A stretch of 64,000 nucleotides of DNA, taken from IMG/VR virus record IMGVR_UViG_3300003322_000571, positions 1 through 64,000 of that record; one strand, written 5' to 3'. Numbering within the stretch: position 1 is the stretch's first letter; the number at the start of each line of letters is the position of its first letter. Below, in pieces: positions 1 to 62,390 of the stretch. The notes beneath the pieces are model-generated. The model searched no databases. It saw only the letters and a list, made by a program, of their open reading frames with translations, and was not told where the DNA came from. The translations under genes were made by a program, and so were the position numbers.

Positions 1-36
1 AGCAGTGGGTCGGGGGTTCGAATCCCTCCACTCCGA
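1..36 (+). tRNA. 3' half of a tRNA truncated by the window edge (anticodon not visible)
   Basis: T-arm GGGGG-TTCGAAT-CCCTC followed by an acceptor 3' strand. Confidence 0.8.
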
Positions 37-498: not shown

Positions 499-743
499 AA
501 GTTGTTGCGTGGGTAGAGACGTTCATCATTTGTTCGACTCAAATATTTCCCGCAATGTACATTTAAGAGACCATCTTGCATGGTGCTGCGATAATCGCCT
601 AAGTGGCTTGGGATGTTGGTTAGTACTCCCTTGAACGACGATCTTGCAGTTAGGACTAATCTGCACGTGTACATTGCGGGAAATCGGGCCTGGTGGCCCA
701 TGGCGGTGTGAAAACCGTAGTTTCTCCGACTTTAACTCAACTT
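499..743 (+). ncRNA. Y RNA-like (YrlA-type) RNA 1: permuted tRNA-like domain with a large insert
   Basis: Shared terminal motif GTTGTTGCGTGG...GTTCATC / TTTAACTCAAC; T-arm ATTTG-TTCGACT-CAAAT, 17-bp stem ATTTCCCGCAATGTACA/TGTACATTGCGGGAAAT, then D-like arm GGGC-CTGGTG-GCCC. Confidence 0.65.
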
Positions 744-747
744 AAAT

Positions 748-856
748 GCGGGCGCTGGTAGCCTCGCTTGGCGACGGCCATAGTAACCAGAAGAGACTCC
801 GGATCTCTATTGTCTGGCGAATGCGAGTATTGGTTCGATTCCAATAAACCTGCACA
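748..856 (+). ncRNA. tRNA-like RNA with an elongated anticodon arm (CCG loop)
   Basis: GCGGG/CCTGC ends, T-arm ATTGG-TTCGATT-CCAAT, distal hairpin AGAGA-CTCCGGA-TCTCT. Confidence 0.55.
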
Positions 857-931
857 GAATTTAGTAAAGCCCTCTGCGAAAGCATTGACACTAAGTTCTG
901 CTACAAGGTTACTTGTAGCAACCAACTGATT

Positions 932-1081
932 ACTGTTGCGAAGTGCAGAATTCCTTCAGAAACTGTCGAGTGTAAACTCTTGGAGGTTCGAATCCTCCCC
1001 AATGGCCATATCGAAAGTGCTGGCAGGTGGCGAAACTGGTAGACGCGAAAGTCCAAAAAGTCTGTACAACTTAATCTCAGT
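932..1081 (+). ncRNA. Y RNA-like RNA 2: circularly permuted tRNA-Leu(CAG)-like domain
   Basis: CTGTTGCGAAG-TGCAGA-ATTCCTTC ... TCTGTAC-AAC-TTAATCTCAG; inside, the variable arm and T-arm come before the D-arm (GGCGAAACTGGTAGACGC). Confidence 0.75.
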
Positions 1082-1089
1082 GTCAAATT

Positions 1090-1174
1090 GGATGACTTAC
1101 TTCCTAGGTGGAAGCACAGCCTCGAAAGCTGATGATCTCGGAAACGGGATGGGGGTCGGTACCTCAGTCATCCG
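1090..1174 (+). tRNA. tRNA-Ser(CGA), non-canonical (probable 8/4 fold)
   Basis: GGATGACT/AGTCATCC acceptor, CAGC-CTCGAAA-GCTG, long variable arm, G73. Confidence 0.75.
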
Positions 1175-1177
1175 CAA

Positions 1178-1320
1178 ATGTGTTGTTGCGTAGTGTAGGA
1201 TTTCTTCATATCCCACGCCGTGTACGTAGGTTCGATTCCTACCTGCCGAGATTCTTGGCAGTCGTCTAGTGGTAGGACAATGGCTTCAAAAAGTGCCTGT
1301 ACGAATTTGACTCAACATAT
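1178..1320 (+). ncRNA. Y RNA-like RNA 3: circularly permuted tRNA domain
   Basis: TGTTGTTGCGTAG-TGTAGG-ATTTCTTC ... CCTGTAC-GAA-TTTGACTCAACA; T-arm GTAGG-TTCGATT-CCTAC, acceptor closed by a loop, then D-arm GTCTAGTGGTAGGAC. Confidence 0.8.
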
Positions 1321-1585: not shown

Positions 1586-1716
1586 GGTAGATTGGTGTAA
1601 CGGTAGCACGCGTAAACTACCACTAATCGATCTTGTCTCGTCTAGCGACGTTGCGTAGAAAAGTGTTACTTCGCTTTCATTCGCGCGCGGTGGGGGTTCG
1701 AATCCCTCGTCTACCT
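1586..1716 (+). ncRNA. Y RNA-like RNA 4: normally ordered tRNA body with the shared stem in place of the anticodon loop
   Basis: GGTAGAT/GTCTACC acceptor with D- and T-arms; insert TTGTCTCGTC-TAGC-GACGTTGCGTAG...TTACTTC. Confidence 0.7.
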
Positions 1717-4836: not shown

Positions 4837-4938
4837 AGGTCCATGGTGTAACGGCAGCATTCCGGTCTCCTAAGTGCTTGCTCTAATGAGCATTTAGGAA
4901 AACCGTCGGTCGCGGTTCGAATCCGTGTGGACCTGCCA
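4837..4938 (+). tRNA. tRNA-Trp(CCA) with a 28-nt hairpin insertion in the anticodon (4871-4898)
   Basis: AGGTCCA/TGGACCT-G-CCA; removing the insert restores CGGT-CT-CCA-AA-ACCG. Confidence 0.8.
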
Positions 4939-7014: not shown

Positions 7015-7341
7015 ATGACAAAGCCAACGTACTACAGCACAGAGAGGTGCCTCGACAACCTGTCGACGGGCAATCCTGAAACTGTCAAGAACTATGTGAT
7101 CTACGTTCTGTGGGAATGTTCTACGGAGTTCATGGTCAATAACGGAATGCCGACGGATCCTGAAGTCGAAAAGTGGATCGAAGTGCTTGAAAGTCGTGAA
7201 GACAAAAACAATCAGTATATTCAGTCTGCAATTGGTGCTTGCCGCGAGTACATCAAACCTACTCCAACGCCAATGCCACCGTACTCTGGTGAACCGACAA
7301 TTGTCAGTGTTAAGCAAGTCAAGTTGAAACTGAAGAAGTGA
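7015..7341 (+). CDS. hypothetical protein
   Basis: ORF. Confidence 0.55.
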   Translation: MTKPTYYSTERCLDNLSTGNPETVKNYVIYVLWECSTEFMVNNGMPTDPEVEKWIEVLESREDKNNQYIQSAIGACREYIKPTPTPMPPYSGEPTIVSVKQVKLKLKK

Positions 7342-7390
7342 GTGTTATTCCCTGCAGTTGCACATAAATATGCGATTACAGGAGAATCTC

Positions 7391-7621
7391 ATGAAACTGA
7401 ATGAATTGTTTGACCGCGGCGATCACGAACTTCAACAAAGTGTTGCTAATCGCCAACGCGAACTGAACCAGAAAGATCAGGCCACGAAAGGTATTTGGTG
7501 GGTTGATGGAGCTGGAAAGAAACTAGCTGGTCCTTTTGCTGATCAAGAAAAGGCTGACAGCTTCAAGAAGAATCGTCCTGATCGTGTGCCGAAGGGTGCT
7601 AAGGCGATCACGATTCGTTAA
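7391..7621 (+). CDS. hypothetical late (possibly virion) protein
   Basis: TAAATA upstream; MKLNELF N-terminus. Confidence 0.6.
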   Translation: MKLNELFDRGDHELQQSVANRQRELNQKDQATKGIWWVDGAGKKLAGPFADQEKADSFKKNRPDRVPKGAKAITIR

Positions 7622-7626
7622 ACAAT

Positions 7627-7824
7627 GCGGGATGTAGCTCAGGGGTACTAACCTTGCTGTATTGTGAGTGATCATTAACTTGCAGTAAAGGCGTAGGTAG
7701 ACGTTGCATAGGGTGATGTAGAAATCGAAGTAGCTATCCGCTTTCTCGTCCAATACTTTCAATGTCTGCTTAGAGCGGCCGGTATCTAACCGGAGGGTCG
7801 GGGGTTCGATTCCCTCCAACCGTA
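7627..7824 (+). tRNA. tRNA-Arg(TCT)-like gene with a ~125-nt structured insertion in the D-loop
   Basis: TAGCTCAGGGGTA-[7648-7772]-GAGC; CCGG-TATCTAA-CCGG; T-arm; imperfect acceptor. Confidence 0.6.
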
Positions 7825-7830
7825 CTAACT

Positions 7831-7861
7831 GCCCACATGGCTTAGGTAAATCGGTACAGCC
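7831..7861 (+). pseudogene. remnant 5' end of a tRNA-Leu displaced by an HNH gene
   Basis: Starts GCCCACATGGCT with a D-arm-like segment; same first 6 nt as the tRNA at 8364. Confidence 0.5.
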
Positions 7862-7901
7862 ACCACCTAGTCATAAATATAGCTGTTCCGGGGAAAGCTA
7901 T

Positions 7902-8378
7902 ATGGCAGACAAAATTACCAAAGAGAAGATTGAAGCAGTTGTATCCGATTGCCAATCTTTTAGAGAGTTAACGATCAAACTTGGCCGAGCGCCGTTAGGC
8001 GGAAACATCTCAGAGATGAAACGCAGGTGTATCAAACTGGGAATCGACACGTCCCATATGCTTGGGAAATCTCATGCTAAGGGAAGTACATCTAACAAAA
8101 GACGAACACCCGCTGAGATATTGGTGGAACGTGATCGATTGCAAGGACGTGCACCTATTGAACAGTTACGTAGAGCACTAAAAGAAAGTGGTGTACAGTA
8201 TCAATGTCAAGTATGTTCGTTAAAAGATTGGAACGGTAAGCCGTTAACTTTACACATCGATCACATAGATGGCCAATACTGGAACTGTAGATTGACGAAT
8301 TTGAGGTACATTTGTCCTAATTGTCATTCGCAGACACCCACGTATTGTGGCAAAAACGTTAATGCCCACGTATGCTAA
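7902..8378 (+). CDS. HNH homing endonuclease
   Basis: CQVC...LHIDHIDG...NLRYICPNCHSQT. Confidence 0.9.
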   Translation: MADKITKEKIEAVVSDCQSFRELTIKLGRAPLGGNISEMKRRCIKLGIDTSHMLGKSHAKGSTSNKRRTPAEILVERDRLQGRAPIEQLRRALKESGVQYQCQVCSLKDWNGKPLTLHIDHIDGQYWNCRLTNLRYICPNCHSQTPTYCGKNVNAHVC

Positions 8379-8437
8379 TTGGTAACGCAGATGGATTTAA
8401 AATCCGTTGACTGTCGGTTCGAGTCCGACTGTGGGTA
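8364..8437 (+). tRNA. tRNA-Leu(TAA) with a short variable arm, overlapping the HNH 3' end
   Basis: GCCCACG/TGTGGGT; ATGGA-TTTAAAA-TCCGT. Confidence 0.85.
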
Positions 8438-8456
8438 CATATCATAGGAGACGTAC

Positions 8457-18721: not shown

Positions 18722-19431
18722 TCATTATTGGTATTATTGCAGCGTTGTTGATCGTTGATTTGTTCTTGCTCGTGCGAGAACGGTTCTACTGGGCTCTCAC
18801 GTTGTACATTGCAGCAATTGCTGTTGCTGTTCACAAAATTGACGGCGTCCAGGAATTCATTCTCAGCAATGGTATCTGGGGTATTGTCAGCGCAGCTGGT
18901 GTATATCTGGCAATCGGTGGTCTCGTGTCAATTCTGAAGTGGTATCAACGTATTCGCAAGTACGGCGTCAAGCTGAAAGCAACAGTTGAGAAGTTCAATA
19001 CATCGTACAAGAATCCTGAACCAAAGCCCGGCGTTGAAAAGACTGTTGATGAGCCAGTTGCAGGTATTCCGATCAAGACGAAGCAGACGCAACCTAAGCA
19101 GTTTACTACCGAAGAATTGACGATCGCACGTCGCAAGGCATTGTATGACAAGCTGTATTCAGCTGGCCTATTGAAAGACGCAGACATTTCTCTTGCGCCG
19201 AGCGAAAAAGTTCTGCTCGACGAACAACTGTTCAAAGATGCAATCACTCCTCGTGCAAGCTGCAACAAGGAACGCATCACGATGTGGATTCTGTTGTGGC
19301 CGTTCGTCGCCGTTACATTCTTCGTGGAAGACTTCCTCGGCAACCTCGCTACATGGATGATGGAGCTGCTTAACGGCGTGTACAGCAAGATCGCCCGTAA
19401 CGCTGTCGACCAAAACATTGGAGAGATCTAA
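18718..19431 (+). CDS. membrane protein
   Basis: Several transmembrane segments. Confidence 0.7.
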   Translation: MIIIGIIAALLIVDLFLLVRERFYWALTLYIAAIAVAVHKIDGVQEFILSNGIWGIVSAAGVYLAIGGLVSILKWYQRIRKYGVKLKATVEKFNTSYKNPEPKPGVEKTVDEPVAGIPIKTKQTQPKQFTTEELTIARRKALYDKLYSAGLLKDADISLAPSEKVLLDEQLFKDAITPRASCNKERITMWILLWPFVAVTFFVEDFLGNLATWMMELLNGVYSKIARNAVDQNIGEI

Positions 19432-22736: not shown

Positions 22737-22951
22737 TGGAACTAAAGGTACGAGCAATTGTCCGTGTTAAGCGAGCAAACGTCGAGTTTGCTCCAGGACT
22801 TGGAATTGGTGTCCTTGCAACACAAGAGTTCAAAGTTCAAGTGCCGTTGGGTCGAACTGTGACCGATCACAGAGTTTCAGCTTGCATTCATGATGTTGGA
22901 CAAGCATTGCTTGACGATAGTGTAGAAGTAATCTACGAGGAAGTGAAATGA
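22736..22951 (+). CDS. hypothetical protein
   Basis: Translationally coupled ORF. Confidence 0.6.
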
Positions 22952-24021
22952 AAATCTACCTTGTCGGCGGTGCAGTTCGCGATATCCTTCTTGGTCTTGA
23001 GCCGAAGGATCGTGACTACGTCGTTGTTGGTGCAACTCCTGAAGATATGCTCGCTAAGGGCTTTTCGAAAGTTGGTGCATCGTTTCCTGTGTTCCTTCAT
23101 CCTGAAACTGGTGAAGAGTACGCTCTTGCACGTACCGAACGGAAGACGGGCGTTGGTTACAACGGGTTTGACGTGACGTTCGATACGTCTATCACTCTGG
23201 AAGATGACCTTCGTCGTCGTGATCTGACGATCAATTCAATGGCAATGGACCTCGAAACGAACGAGATCATTGATCCGTTCGGTGGTCAAAGTGATCTCAA
23301 GCGAAAGATCCTCCGTCATACAAGTGAAGCGTTTGCTGAGGATCCGGTTCGTGTTCTTCGTACTGCTCGGTTCGCAGCTCGGTACGGGTTTGATGTGTCA
23401 GAAACGACACTGGAGCTGATGGAACAGGTCGCTCCAGAACTTGACCATGTTCCTGCGGAACGAATCTTCGCCGAGTTCCAGAAGGGCTTGATGGAGAAAG
23501 CTCCGTACAGGATGCTTGGTGTACTGGTACAGTGCTACGCTGACAACGTTAAGTCGGTTGAACCATTTCTTCGTGGTGATCATGATCTGTGGCAACGTCT
23601 GCACCTTGTTCGAGATGATACGCCGTTGCATGTTCGGTTTGCTCTGATCGCTCGTCGCTTCCACCCGGAAGATTACGAAGCGTGCAAGATTCCTACAGAC
23701 CTTGCACGAGTGGCGAAAGCAGTTCAGTCGCACTTCTATCAATGGAAGGGACTTCGTACTTGCTCTGATGAACGGTTCGTTAAGATGTGTGACAGATACC
23801 GTGCTTTCAGCAACCCGGACTTCTTCCAGCAAGTGCTCGATGTATTTGAATTCATTGAACATCCGTACGCGATCAAAGGTGTATGGCGTGAACCTATCAA
23901 CGAACGTCTGGCGTTGGCAACGAGCATCGATGCTGCAACAATTGTTGCTAGTCTGCCGATTAAAGACGGCAAGTTGATTCAGGCGAAGATTCACGAAGCA
24001 CGTCTTGCCGCAATGAAGTAA
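22948..24021 (+). CDS. cca: tRNA nucleotidyltransferase (CCA-adding enzyme)
   Basis: [40 protein letters not shown]. Confidence 0.95.
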
Positions 24022-46936: not shown

Positions 46937-47007
46937 GCCTCAGCCGATGGAGCGGCGGGACGCCTTCTAAGCGACCTTTGATGGGGGTTCGAATCCCTCC
47001 TGAGGCA
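46937..47007 (+). tRNA. tRNA-Arg(TCT), short D-arm
   Basis: GCCTCAG/CTGAGGC; loop CT-TCT-AA. Confidence 0.8.
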
Positions 47008-47022
47008 CATAAGGAGATAAAT

Positions 47023-62292: not shown

Positions 62293-62390
62293 GCCAGCGT
62301 TTCTAATATTGGCCTTAGGGGTGCCCTTATAAAGCACTAAGACCCGTCTAGATCAGGCGGTTAATGTGGGTTCGATTCCCATCGCTGGTA
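62293..62390 (+). tRNA. tRNA-Ile(TAT)-like with a long variable arm
   Basis: GCCAGCG/CGCTGGT; loop CT-TAT-AA; extra arm of about 28 nt. Confidence 0.7.

What the first reader, a model, noticed from the sequence alone, without database searches (positions are those of the whole stretch)
7627..7824. tRNA-Arg(TCT) with a ~125-nt structured insertion in the D-loop
Seen: D-stem halves GCTC and GAGC are separated by two long hairpins (CCTTGCTGTA/TGCAGTAAAGG and TAGGTAGACGTTG/CAATGTCTGCTTA). The anticodon loop has a non-canonical TA-TCT-AA and the acceptor is imperfect. Inference: an atypical intron, or a tRNA scaffold displaying an RNA domain.
Basis: seen in the sequence. Interest (0 to 1): 0.62.

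Follow-up and report, generated by a model that had tools for sequence, protein, structure and literature searches.

The report
Broken tRNA-Arg gene with folded insert
In the tRNA gene array of a 350-kb soil phage there is a tRNA-Arg-like gene split in its D-loop by a 125-base self-folding insert, but its two halves would not make a working tRNA, so it is most likely a leftover of gene shuffling, not a new kind of intron.

Summary
Bases 7627-7647 read as tRNA positions 1-21. Bases 7773-7824 read as positions 22-73 of a tRNA-Arg(UCU)-type gene. The 125 nt between them (7648-7772) fold into two hairpins, on the transcribed strand only (z = -3.2 against +0.9).

The arrangement is not an assembly error. 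An independent 2024 soil metagenome contig spans both junctions with one change, and that change keeps a base pair (C-G to U.G).

It is not a functional tRNA-Arg with an intron:
- The acceptor stem has 4 of 7 pairs.
- Position 33 is A, not U.
- No single deletion makes ARAGORN call a tRNA (0 of 1778 tried).
- There are no group I or bulge-helix-bulge features.
- The phage has no splicing endonuclease or RtcB.
- The insert was not found in the three nearest related phage records, which are fragments (27-53% complete).

The next tRNA gene downstream is visibly split by an HNH homing endonuclease gene that a sister strain lacks, so this array is being actively rearranged.

Best reading (about 0.5): a relic, possibly a chimera of two tRNA gene pieces. 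Main rival (about 0.27): a non-decoding tRNA-like RNA that carries an extra domain.

A second D-loop-interrupted gene in the same genome (343500-343672) has otherwise intact arms, though C at position 33, and keeps a more novel reading open.

The parts
7627..7647 (+). 5' tRNA-like piece (positions about -1 to 21): acceptor 5' strand, U8 A9, D-stem 5' strand GCTC (7637-7640), D-loop AGGGGTA carrying G18 G19 A21
   Evidence: Read. Aligns with the 5' ends of phage tRNA-Arg(UCU) genes. TAGCTCAG is largely a tRNA motif in this genome: 7 of its 10 copies lie in called tRNAs. Too short for an Rfam hit on its own.
7648..7772 (+). 125-nt insert between tRNA positions 21 and 22. It is unique in the genome and folds into P1 and P2.
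   Evidence: Fold -37.7 kcal/mol, z -3.24 on the + strand; z +0.9 on the - strand. No other copy in the genome by BLAST or by covariance model R1. Stops in all three + frames.
7652..7692 (+). P1 hairpin. MFE register: 7656-7658/7690-7692 plus 7660-7669/7678-7687.
7694..7772 (+). P2: 13-bp closing stem 7694-7706/7760-7772 (three G.U pairs) around an inner branched hairpin. Its 3' strand abuts the D-stem 3' strand.
   Evidence: The sister-strain change C7702T turns C-G into U.G.
7773..7824 (+). 3' tRNA piece (positions 22-73) of tRNA-Arg(UCU) type: GAGC, anticodon arm with a G27.A43 mismatch and loop TATCTAA (A33), canonical T arm, 3' acceptor CAACCGT, discriminator A
   Evidence: Rfam tRNA model positions 21-71, 23.9 bits, E 0.0013, when searched alone. 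BLAST hits to phage tRNA-Arg genes. Alignment A1.
7831..7864 (+). Context: orphan 5' half of a Leu-type tRNA gene, cut off from its T arm (8412 onward) by the HNH cassette
   Evidence: A sister-strain contig joins 7864 to 8412 through 21 other letters. That join gives an 82-nt tRNA-like gene with a 7/7 acceptor stem, which ARAGORN calls.
7902..8378 (+). Context: HNH homing endonuclease gene, absent from the sister strain. Its 3' end overlaps the replacement tRNA-Leu(UAA).
   Evidence: phrog_10822, E 6e-47. Pfam HNH_3 and HNH, both below their cut-offs. Presence/absence seen.
8364..8438 (+). Context: intact tRNA-Leu(UAA), whose 5' two-thirds arrived with the HNH cassette
7358..7621 (+). Context: upstream orphan ORF (87 aa) ending 6 nt before the element, on the same strand as all the tRNA genes
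   Evidence: No homologue found anywhere.

Best explanation
The element is a relic of a tRNA-Arg(UCU)-type gene in the tRNA array of an uncultivated 350-kb soil/root phage. Its 5' piece may come from a different tRNA gene than its 3' piece.

Shown: it is collinear with a tRNA from position 1 to 73, and it is interrupted between positions 21 and 22 by a 125-nt segment that folds on its own into two hairpins on the transcribed strand.

Shown: it cannot work as tRNA-Arg. The acceptor strands pair at only 4 of 7 positions, position 33 is A, and pair 27-43 is G.A. No tRNA finder accepts it, with or without the insert.

Inferred mechanism: the array is being reshuffled by homing endonuclease genes and by recombination between paralogous tRNA genes. 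One such event is caught 7 nt downstream. Events of this kind leave tRNA pieces and foreign segments behind, and this element is one such product.

Inferred: it lies 6 nt after an ORF and 6 nt before the next tRNA-type gene, on the same strand. It is therefore probably still transcribed with the array and trimmed by the tRNA-processing enzymes that cut its neighbours.

Inferred: nothing splices the insert out, and the RNA is neither charged nor used in decoding.
For: - Not called by ARAGORN or by the Rfam tRNA model at E<=10 on the whole region.
- In-silico removal of the insert gives no call at default or mildly relaxed thresholds. None of 1778 single-deletion variants is called, whereas comparable elements elsewhere in the genome are rescued.
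- No 7-mer within 420 nt upstream pairs at 6 of 7 or better with the 3' acceptor strand. Most of the other uncalled T-arm elements have a 7/7 partner.
- The three acceptor mismatches sit in a 5' piece whose other 14 nt are canonical. The 3' end carries the trailer ACTA, as do four other tRNA-type genes here. This fits two pieces of different origin.
- A sister strain lacks the adjacent HNH gene and joins the orphan half at 7831-7864 to the T arm at 8412. More tRNA scraps lie at 1257-1323 and elsewhere.
- The insert is absent from the three nearest related phage records by BLAST and by covariance model.
- AGA is the rarest Arg codon in the phage, 3.9% of Arg codons.
- No Rfam intron or ribozyme match. 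No EndA or RtcB gene in the phage.
Against: - The insert's fold is strong and strand-specific.
- All three non-Watson-Crick pairs in the 13-bp stem are G.U on the transcribed strand, and the only substitution seen in the sister strain keeps pairing.
- Every tertiary-core nucleotide of the tRNA body is intact: U8, A14, G18 G19, A21, G53 T54 T55 C56, A58, C61. The D stem has 4 of 4 pairs and the T stem 5 of 5.
- P2 ends exactly against the D stem, as expected for an insertion that a folded tRNA can tolerate.
- A second gene in this genome (343500-343672) has a roughly 100-nt insert at the same place and otherwise intact arms, though C at position 33.
- A plain decaying relic need not show any of this.
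Confidence: 0.5

Rival explanations
1. A functional, non-decoding tRNA-like RNA. The transcript folds into an L-shaped tRNA body. P1 and P2 project from the D-loop corner as an added domain. The damaged acceptor stem and A33 are tolerated or intended, because the RNA is not charged. It would act as a decoy for tRNA-targeting host nucleases, as a processing or stability element of the array transcript, or as a ligand for a phage protein.
For: - Strand-specific stable fold of the insert.
- G.U-only exceptions in the P2 stem, and a pair-preserving change in a sister strain.
- Intact tRNA core nucleotides and a canonical T arm.
- P2 is positioned to stack on the D stem, and a cloverleaf-plus-insert fold is feasible at -56.8 kcal/mol against an MFE of -66.4.
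- Part of the insert (7697-7762) is still recognisable at about 82% identity in a third metagenome.
- A second D-loop-insert gene exists in the genome.
Against: - No homologue of the insert in the nearest related phage records or elsewhere in the genome.
- No RNA data.
- The comparative support is one substitution in a 99.7%-identical strain.
- The inserts of the two D-loop-interrupted genes share no significant sequence similarity.
- No known family matches.
Confidence: 0.27
2. A true intervening sequence. The 125 nt are cut out of the precursor and the halves are joined, for example by a host or phage endonuclease plus one of the phage's RNA ligases. The product would be a tRNA-Arg(UCU) that reads the rare AGA codon.
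For: - The insert lies exactly between positions 21 and 22, a site where some archaea carry non-canonical introns (PMC3241643).
- Huge phages are reported to carry tRNAs with 'enigmatic introns' (bioRxiv 10.1101/356790).
- The phage encodes one Rnl1-type and two Rnl2-type RNA ligases and a CCA-adding enzyme.
- The phage's other tRNA-Arg(UCU) candidate (46937-47008) is itself abnormal.
Against: - The joined product would still have a 4 of 7 acceptor stem, A33 and G27.A43, and is rejected by ARAGORN.
- The junctions have no bulge-helix-bulge (inspection).
- There are no group I or group II hallmarks and no Rfam hit.
- The phage has no EndA or RtcB.
- No insert-less allele was seen in any run.
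Confidence: 0.08
3. An expanded but working tRNA-Arg. The insert stays in the mature RNA as a giant D-loop, and the molecule is charged and used on the ribosome.
For: The D-loop region after G18 G19 is a place where tRNAs vary in length. The core nucleotides are intact.
Against: - U33 is close to universal in elongator tRNAs (established knowledge), and here it is A.
- Three acceptor mismatches would impair RNase P, CCA addition, charging and EF-Tu binding.
- No precedent for a 125-nt D-loop in a decoding tRNA.
Confidence: 0.04

Closest known systems
tRNAs with 'enigmatic introns' in huge phages (Lak megaphages; bioRxiv 10.1101/356790, read)
   Same: Over-long tRNA-like genes in the tRNA sets of very large phage genomes. 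The inserts match no Rfam family. The inserts are identical or nearly so between samples. The mechanism is unknown.
   Different: The Lak inserts were found with eukaryote-mode tRNAscan, which looks for anticodon-loop introns. Their host tRNAs were assignable, and insert-less alleles exist. Here the insert is in the D-loop, the 'exons' fail as a tRNA, and no insert-less allele was seen.
Non-canonical archaeal and red-algal tRNA introns at D-loop positions (for example Aeropyrum pernix, PMC3241643; Cyanidioschyzon merolae, PMC3728597)
   Same: An intervening sequence in the D-arm region of a tRNA gene, with pairing that brings its ends together.
   Different: Those introns are defined by a bulge-helix-bulge at the junctions and are cut by the EndA/Sen endonuclease. 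Neither the motif nor the enzyme is present here, and the setting is a bacterial virus.
Homing-endonuclease-driven turnover of phage tRNA gene clusters (T4 SegB, PMC2330249; PMC13096335)
   Same: A free-standing endonuclease gene sits among phage tRNA genes. Its presence varies between close strains, and flanking tRNA sequence is co-converted. This is seen directly at 7831-8438.
   Different: The 125-nt insert of the finding carries no endonuclease ORF or recognisable remnant. Its link to homing is therefore inferred from the neighbourhood, not shown.
Ordinary tRNA pseudogenes and tRNA gene fragments
   Same: Loss of acceptor pairing and of U33. Rejection by tRNA finders. Location in a duplicated, fast-changing array.
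   Different: The damage is confined to a few positions. The insert is unusually well folded on one strand.
Stable small RNAs of unknown function encoded in the T4 tRNA cluster (species 1 and 2 RNAs; recalled from memory, not checked here)
   Same: Non-tRNA structured RNAs co-transcribed and co-processed with phage tRNAs.
   Different: No sequence or structural comparison was made. This is only a lead.

Membership tests
Canonical elongator tRNA (Rfam RF00005) | 7-bp acceptor stem formed by the 5' and 3' ends | tested here: not met
   4 of 7 pairs in either register. The best alternative is 6 pairs plus a bulge and an A.A mismatch.
Canonical elongator tRNA (Rfam RF00005) | 7-nt anticodon loop with U33 on a 5-bp stem | tested here: not met
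   The loop is TATCTAA, so A is at position 33. Pair 27-43 is G.A.
Canonical elongator tRNA (Rfam RF00005) | D arm and T arm with the conserved core nucleotides | tested here: met
   GCTC/GAGC, A14, G18 G19, A21; GGGGG TTCGATT CCCTC. The D arm is split by 125 nt.
Canonical elongator tRNA (Rfam RF00005) | Scores above the family threshold, or is called by a tRNA finder | tested here: not met
   No Rfam tRNA hit at E<=10 on the whole region. The 3' piece alone scores 23.9 bits against a 29-bit gathering score. ARAGORN finds nothing, with or without the insert.
Group I intron in a tRNA gene | Catalytic core P3-P9; terminal G at the 3' end; insertion in the anticodon loop; usually 200 nt or more | tested here: not met
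   No RF00028 or other intron hit at permissive thresholds. The insert is 125 nt, ends in A, and lies in the D-loop.
Bulge-helix-bulge (archaeal/eukaryal-type) tRNA intron | Two 3-nt bulges separated by a 4-bp helix at the two junctions | tested here: not met
   The 5' junction (7647/7648) is single-stranded or in a small local hairpin. The 3' junction (7772/7773) lies between two stacked helices with no bulge (folds; judged by inspection).
Bulge-helix-bulge (archaeal/eukaryal-type) tRNA intron | Cognate splicing endonuclease (PF01974) and RtcB-type ligase available | tested here: not met
   Neither is in the phage genome. The positive controls of those searches worked. The host is unknown and could not be tested. 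Rnl1- and Rnl2-type ligases are present.
Huge-phage 'enigmatic' tRNA inserts (Lak type) | Insert in an otherwise assignable tRNA, with insert-less alleles in related genomes | tested here: inconclusive
   The tRNA type is assignable only from the 3' piece. Sister strains in other runs keep the insert, and no insert-less allele was seen. Element G of the same genome fits this definition better.
Homing-endonuclease cassette inserted in a tRNA gene | An endonuclease ORF, or its remnant, inside the insert; presence/absence between strains | tested here: not met
   No open frame in the insert. No similarity to the neighbouring HNH gene or to anything else in the genome. The neighbouring tRNA gene does meet this test.
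tmRNA or other tRNA-like RNAs in Rfam | Match to the family model beyond the T arm | tested here: not met
   Only an 18-nt T-arm match to the tmRNA model, 13.6 bits against a 47-bit gathering score.

The most novel reading that the evidence does not exclude
This soil phage carries a small class of tRNA-type genes with large structured inserts in the D-loop. One is the finding. The other is a tRNA(CUA) gene at genome 343500-343672 with intact arms (7/7 acceptor) but C at position 33. The inserts would be either removed by a non-archaeal pathway, such as an unknown endonuclease plus the phage's Rnl-type ligases, or kept as functional expansions. That would make them a bacterial-virus counterpart of non-canonical archaeal tRNA introns, or natural 'tRNA scaffold' RNAs.
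Probability: 0.12. Interest if true: 0.8.

Novelty: new variant of a known kind. Interest (0 to 1): 0.4.

Why it matters
If it is a relic, the locus is a clean, dated snapshot of how homing endonucleases and recombination break and remake tRNA genes in huge-phage tRNA arrays. It is also a warning that over-long 'tRNAs with introns' in such genomes can be debris.

If the structured insert is functional or spliced, bacterial viruses would have D-loop intervening sequences or tRNA-scaffolded RNA domains. Neither is known at present. Together with the phage's three RNA ligases, that would point to an undescribed RNA-processing route.

Tried and rejected
Searches for relatives that found nothing useful:
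- Megablast and blastn of the region against 50,697 phage records. Only the T-arm and anticodon part hits tRNA-Arg genes.
- tblastn and pattern searches with the flanking ORFs in phages, IMG/VR, JGI metagenomes and the 5.8-billion-protein set. No relatives.
- Exact and gapped DNA patterns from the junctions, the odd anticodon arm and the 3' end, in IMG/VR and JGI metagenomes. Nothing, or chance hits next to ordinary bacterial tRNAs.
- Covariance model R1 of the insert against its own genome and the three nearest relatives. It finds only itself.

Ideas tested and dropped:
- A shared motif (GTTGCRTAG, ATCCGC) between this insert and those of other long tRNA-like genes. Pairwise local alignments are no better than shuffles, or only marginally so. 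GTTGCGTAG belongs to a separate roughly 30-nt box that this element lacks.
- A hammerhead-like CUGAUGA...GAAA in the 1020-1250 element. It does not fit the core and has no Rfam hit.
- The 98-aa ORF on the minus strand (7523-7819). It is the usual antisense-of-T-arm artefact.
- A partner for either acceptor strand elsewhere within 1.4 kb. None lies next to a T arm.
- A wider scan for D-stem-split tRNAs in the relatives. It gave mostly tandem-array artefacts.
- A promoter and terminator scan. Uninformative.

Limits:
- No RNA run holds this DNA, so expression could not be tested.
- The joined (insert-less) sequence was never sent to a database search tool. The two pieces were searched separately by reference. 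Deletion variants were built and run only with local ARAGORN inside the Python box.

Full report
**Setting.** The window is the first 64 kb of a single 350,089-bp virus record classed as complete. It has 48% G+C. ARAGORN finds 56 tRNA genes and one permuted tmRNA. PHROG matches include virion structural and baseplate proteins, a CCA-adding enzyme and NAMPT, so this is a jumbo phage. The tRNA-rich region runs from about 341.9 kb across the contig ends to about 47 kb. All these genes are on the + strand, interspersed with small ORFs. The DNA comes from a 2016 root metagenome.

Bases 7627-7647 read G, CGGGATG, TA, GCTC, AGGGGTA. That is a tRNA from its 5' end to position 21, with U8, A14, G18 G19 and A21 in place. 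Bases 7773-7824 read GAGC, G, GCCGG, TATCTAA, CCGGA, GGGTC, GGGGG TTCGATT CCCTC, CAACCGT, A. That is a tRNA from position 22 to the discriminator. Searched alone, this 3' piece aligns to Rfam tRNA model positions 21-71 as a 5'-truncated hit (23.9 bits, E 0.0013). By BLAST and alignment it belongs with phage tRNA-Arg(UCU) genes. The 5' piece is too short to score. Its TAGCTCAG occurs 10 times in the genome, 7 of them inside called tRNAs.

**The insert is structured.** Between the two pieces lie 125 nt (7648-7772). They are unique in the genome, and all three + frames are closed. They fold into a hairpin P1 (7652-7692) and a longer P2 whose 13-bp closing stem (7694-7706 with 7760-7772) ends directly against GAGC. 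The insert folds at -37.7 kcal/mol, z = -3.24, with 0 of 200 shuffles as good. Its reverse complement gives z = +0.9. The asymmetry comes from G.U pairs, so the structure belongs to the transcribed strand.

**The arrangement is real DNA.** The source-run contig covers it without a difference. An independent 312-nt contig from a 2024 soil metagenome spans 7496-7807, both junctions included, with one change. That change, C7702T, turns a C-G pair of P2 into U.G. A 2025 rhizosphere run holds 7697-7762 at about 82% identity.

**It is not a tRNA-Arg with an intron.**
- The acceptor strands pair at 4 of 7 positions. The best alternative needs a bulge and an A.A mismatch.
- No 7-mer within 420 nt upstream pairs at 6 of 7 or better with the 3' strand. 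Most of the other uncalled T-arm elements in this genome have a perfect partner.
- Position 33 is A, and pair 27-43 is G.A.
- ARAGORN and the Rfam tRNA model reject the locus.
- With the insert removed inside a local script, ARAGORN still rejects it at default and mildly relaxed thresholds.
- None of 1778 single-deletion variants is called.
- The joined sequence was not sent to any database search tool. The pieces were searched one by one, by reference.
- Nothing in Rfam matches the insert. It is too short for a group I intron, lies in the wrong loop and ends in A.
- The junctions form no bulge-helix-bulge.
- The phage has no EndA-type endonuclease and no RtcB. It does have one Rnl1-type and two Rnl2-type RNA ligases.

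**The neighbourhood shows how such objects arise.**
- Seven bases downstream, 7831-7864 is the orphan 5' half of a Leu-type tRNA gene.
- Then comes an HNH homing endonuclease gene (7902-8378; phrog_10822, E 6e-47).
- Its end overlaps an intact tRNA-Leu(UAA) (8364-8438).
- In the sister strain, a contig runs from 7864 through 21 other letters straight to 8412.
- That join gives an 82-nt tRNA-like gene with a perfect acceptor stem.
- So the endonuclease cassette, which carries its own 5' tRNA part, has split a tRNA gene here, as known for SegB in the T4 tRNA cluster (PMC2330249).
- Divergence from the sister strain jumps from about 8% (7087-7325) to under 1% (7371-7864), which suggests recent exchange.
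- Other scraps and over-long tRNA-like genes are scattered through the array.
- The three acceptor mismatches sit in an otherwise canonical 5' piece. The 3' end has the same ACTA trailer as four other tRNA-type genes here. Together these suggest that the two pieces may come from different genes.

**Conservation is shallow.** The flanking ORFs have no relatives anywhere. The nearest phages, found through NAMPT at 62-65% identity, have dense tRNA arrays. Neither BLAST nor a covariance model of the insert finds a counterpart there. Those records are fragments (27-53% complete).

**What speaks against a plain relic.**
- The insert's helices look selected at the RNA level: only G.U exceptions in the stem, and a pair-keeping substitution in the sister strain.
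- The tRNA core is untouched.
- P2 is placed where a folded tRNA could tolerate it.
- The genome holds a second case at 343500-343672. That gene has a 7/7 acceptor stem, a D stem GTGT/GCAC split by about 100 nt right after the D-loop GG, a normal T arm and a CUA anticodon with C at position 33.
- That second gene becomes an ARAGORN tRNA in 125 deletion variants, all within the D region.
- Its insert is not significantly structured (z = -1.1) and shares no sequence with this one.
- Huge phages have been reported to carry tRNAs with 'enigmatic introns' (bioRxiv 10.1101/356790).

**Verdict.**
- Most likely (about 0.5): a relic or chimera left by the turnover of the array, probably still co-transcribed but neither spliced nor charged.
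- About 0.27: a functional non-decoding tRNA-like RNA that carries an extra domain.
- About 0.08: a genuine intervening sequence.
- About 0.04: an expanded working tRNA.
- RNA data, and orthologues at about 80% identity, would decide between these.

Noticed in passing
genome 343500-343672 (L001:3500-3672), + strand: A second D-loop-interrupted tRNA-type gene. It has a perfect 7/7 acceptor stem, a D stem GTGT/GCAC split by about 100 nt after the D-loop GG, a normal T arm, and the anticodon loop CCCTAAG (CUA, reading amber, with C33). It becomes an ARAGORN tRNA when the insert is deleted. It is better preserved than the finding itself.
   Followed up: partly
window 7831-8438: An HNH homing endonuclease cassette has split a Leu-type tRNA gene. 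It leaves an orphan 5' half at 7831-7864 and brings a replacement 5' part. A sister strain in a 2024 soil metagenome lacks the cassette.
   Followed up: yes
window 1586-1716, 4837-4935, 1020-1250; 1257-1323: More over-long tRNA-like genes with good acceptor stems. Their inserts appear to lie in the anticodon region: 131 nt; 99 nt with a 10-bp hairpin that sequesters the anticodon loop; and 231 nt. There is also a truncated copy of the 5' half and insert start of the 231-nt one.
   Followed up: partly
window 62293-62390: A 98-nt tRNA-Ile(UAU) with a 25-nt extra arm. Rfam calls it (32.4 bits) but ARAGORN misses it.
   Followed up: partly
window 1650, 62451, (1185); genome 349909, + strand: A conserved box of about 30 nt, GTTGCGTAG, 7 nt, GTTACTTC, then T-rich. 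It is repeated in non-coding spots of the tRNA region and may be a phage promoter or a nuclease site.
   Followed up: no
whole genome; suppressor-type tRNAs at 332868-332944 and 344214-344286: TAG ends only 4 of 153 long ORFs, while the phage carries two or three tRNAs with a CUA anticodon. This hints at amber read-through or recoding in part of the genome.
   Followed up: no
window 500-1320: An 800-nt stretch with no convincing ORF. It holds four T-arm-like hairpins outside any called tRNA (T54 at 533, 834, 987, 1231) and a 16-bp long-range inverted repeat (545-560 with 669-684). No Rfam match.
   Followed up: no
window 46937-47008: The phage's only ARAGORN-called tRNA-Arg(UCU) lacks the 5' D-stem strand and most of the D-loop, and it gets no Rfam call. 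So both Arg(UCU)-type genes of this phage are abnormal in the D arm.
   Followed up: partly
genome 346357-346436, 349474-349553; window 8364-8438: Leu-anticodon tRNA-type genes of 75-82 nt without the long variable arm expected of bacterial tRNA-Leu. Some have an enlarged D-loop (GGTAAATTGGTAC).
   Followed up: no
genome 350026-350089 joined to window 1-36: The contig ends overlap by about 25 nt inside a tRNA-Pro(UGG) gene, so the record is a closed circle or permuted and that tRNA is normal.
   Followed up: partly
genome 69143-69739 (+), 309586-310059 (-), 336990-337586 (+); 304515-304896 (-): Two Rnl2-type and one Rnl1-type RNA ligase genes, and a permuted tmRNA. With the CCA-adding enzyme at 22948-24021 this makes a large RNA-repair and translation toolkit.
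   Followed up: no
L046:3845-3954, minus strand (relative G003, 18845-18954): A related phage has a stand-alone 110-nt tRNA-Arg(UCU) with a perfect acceptor stem and a doubly extended anticodon arm. Its extra segment contains GTATCTCAACCG, close to the odd anticodon arm of the finding (GTATCTAACCG). This may be chance.
   Followed up: partly
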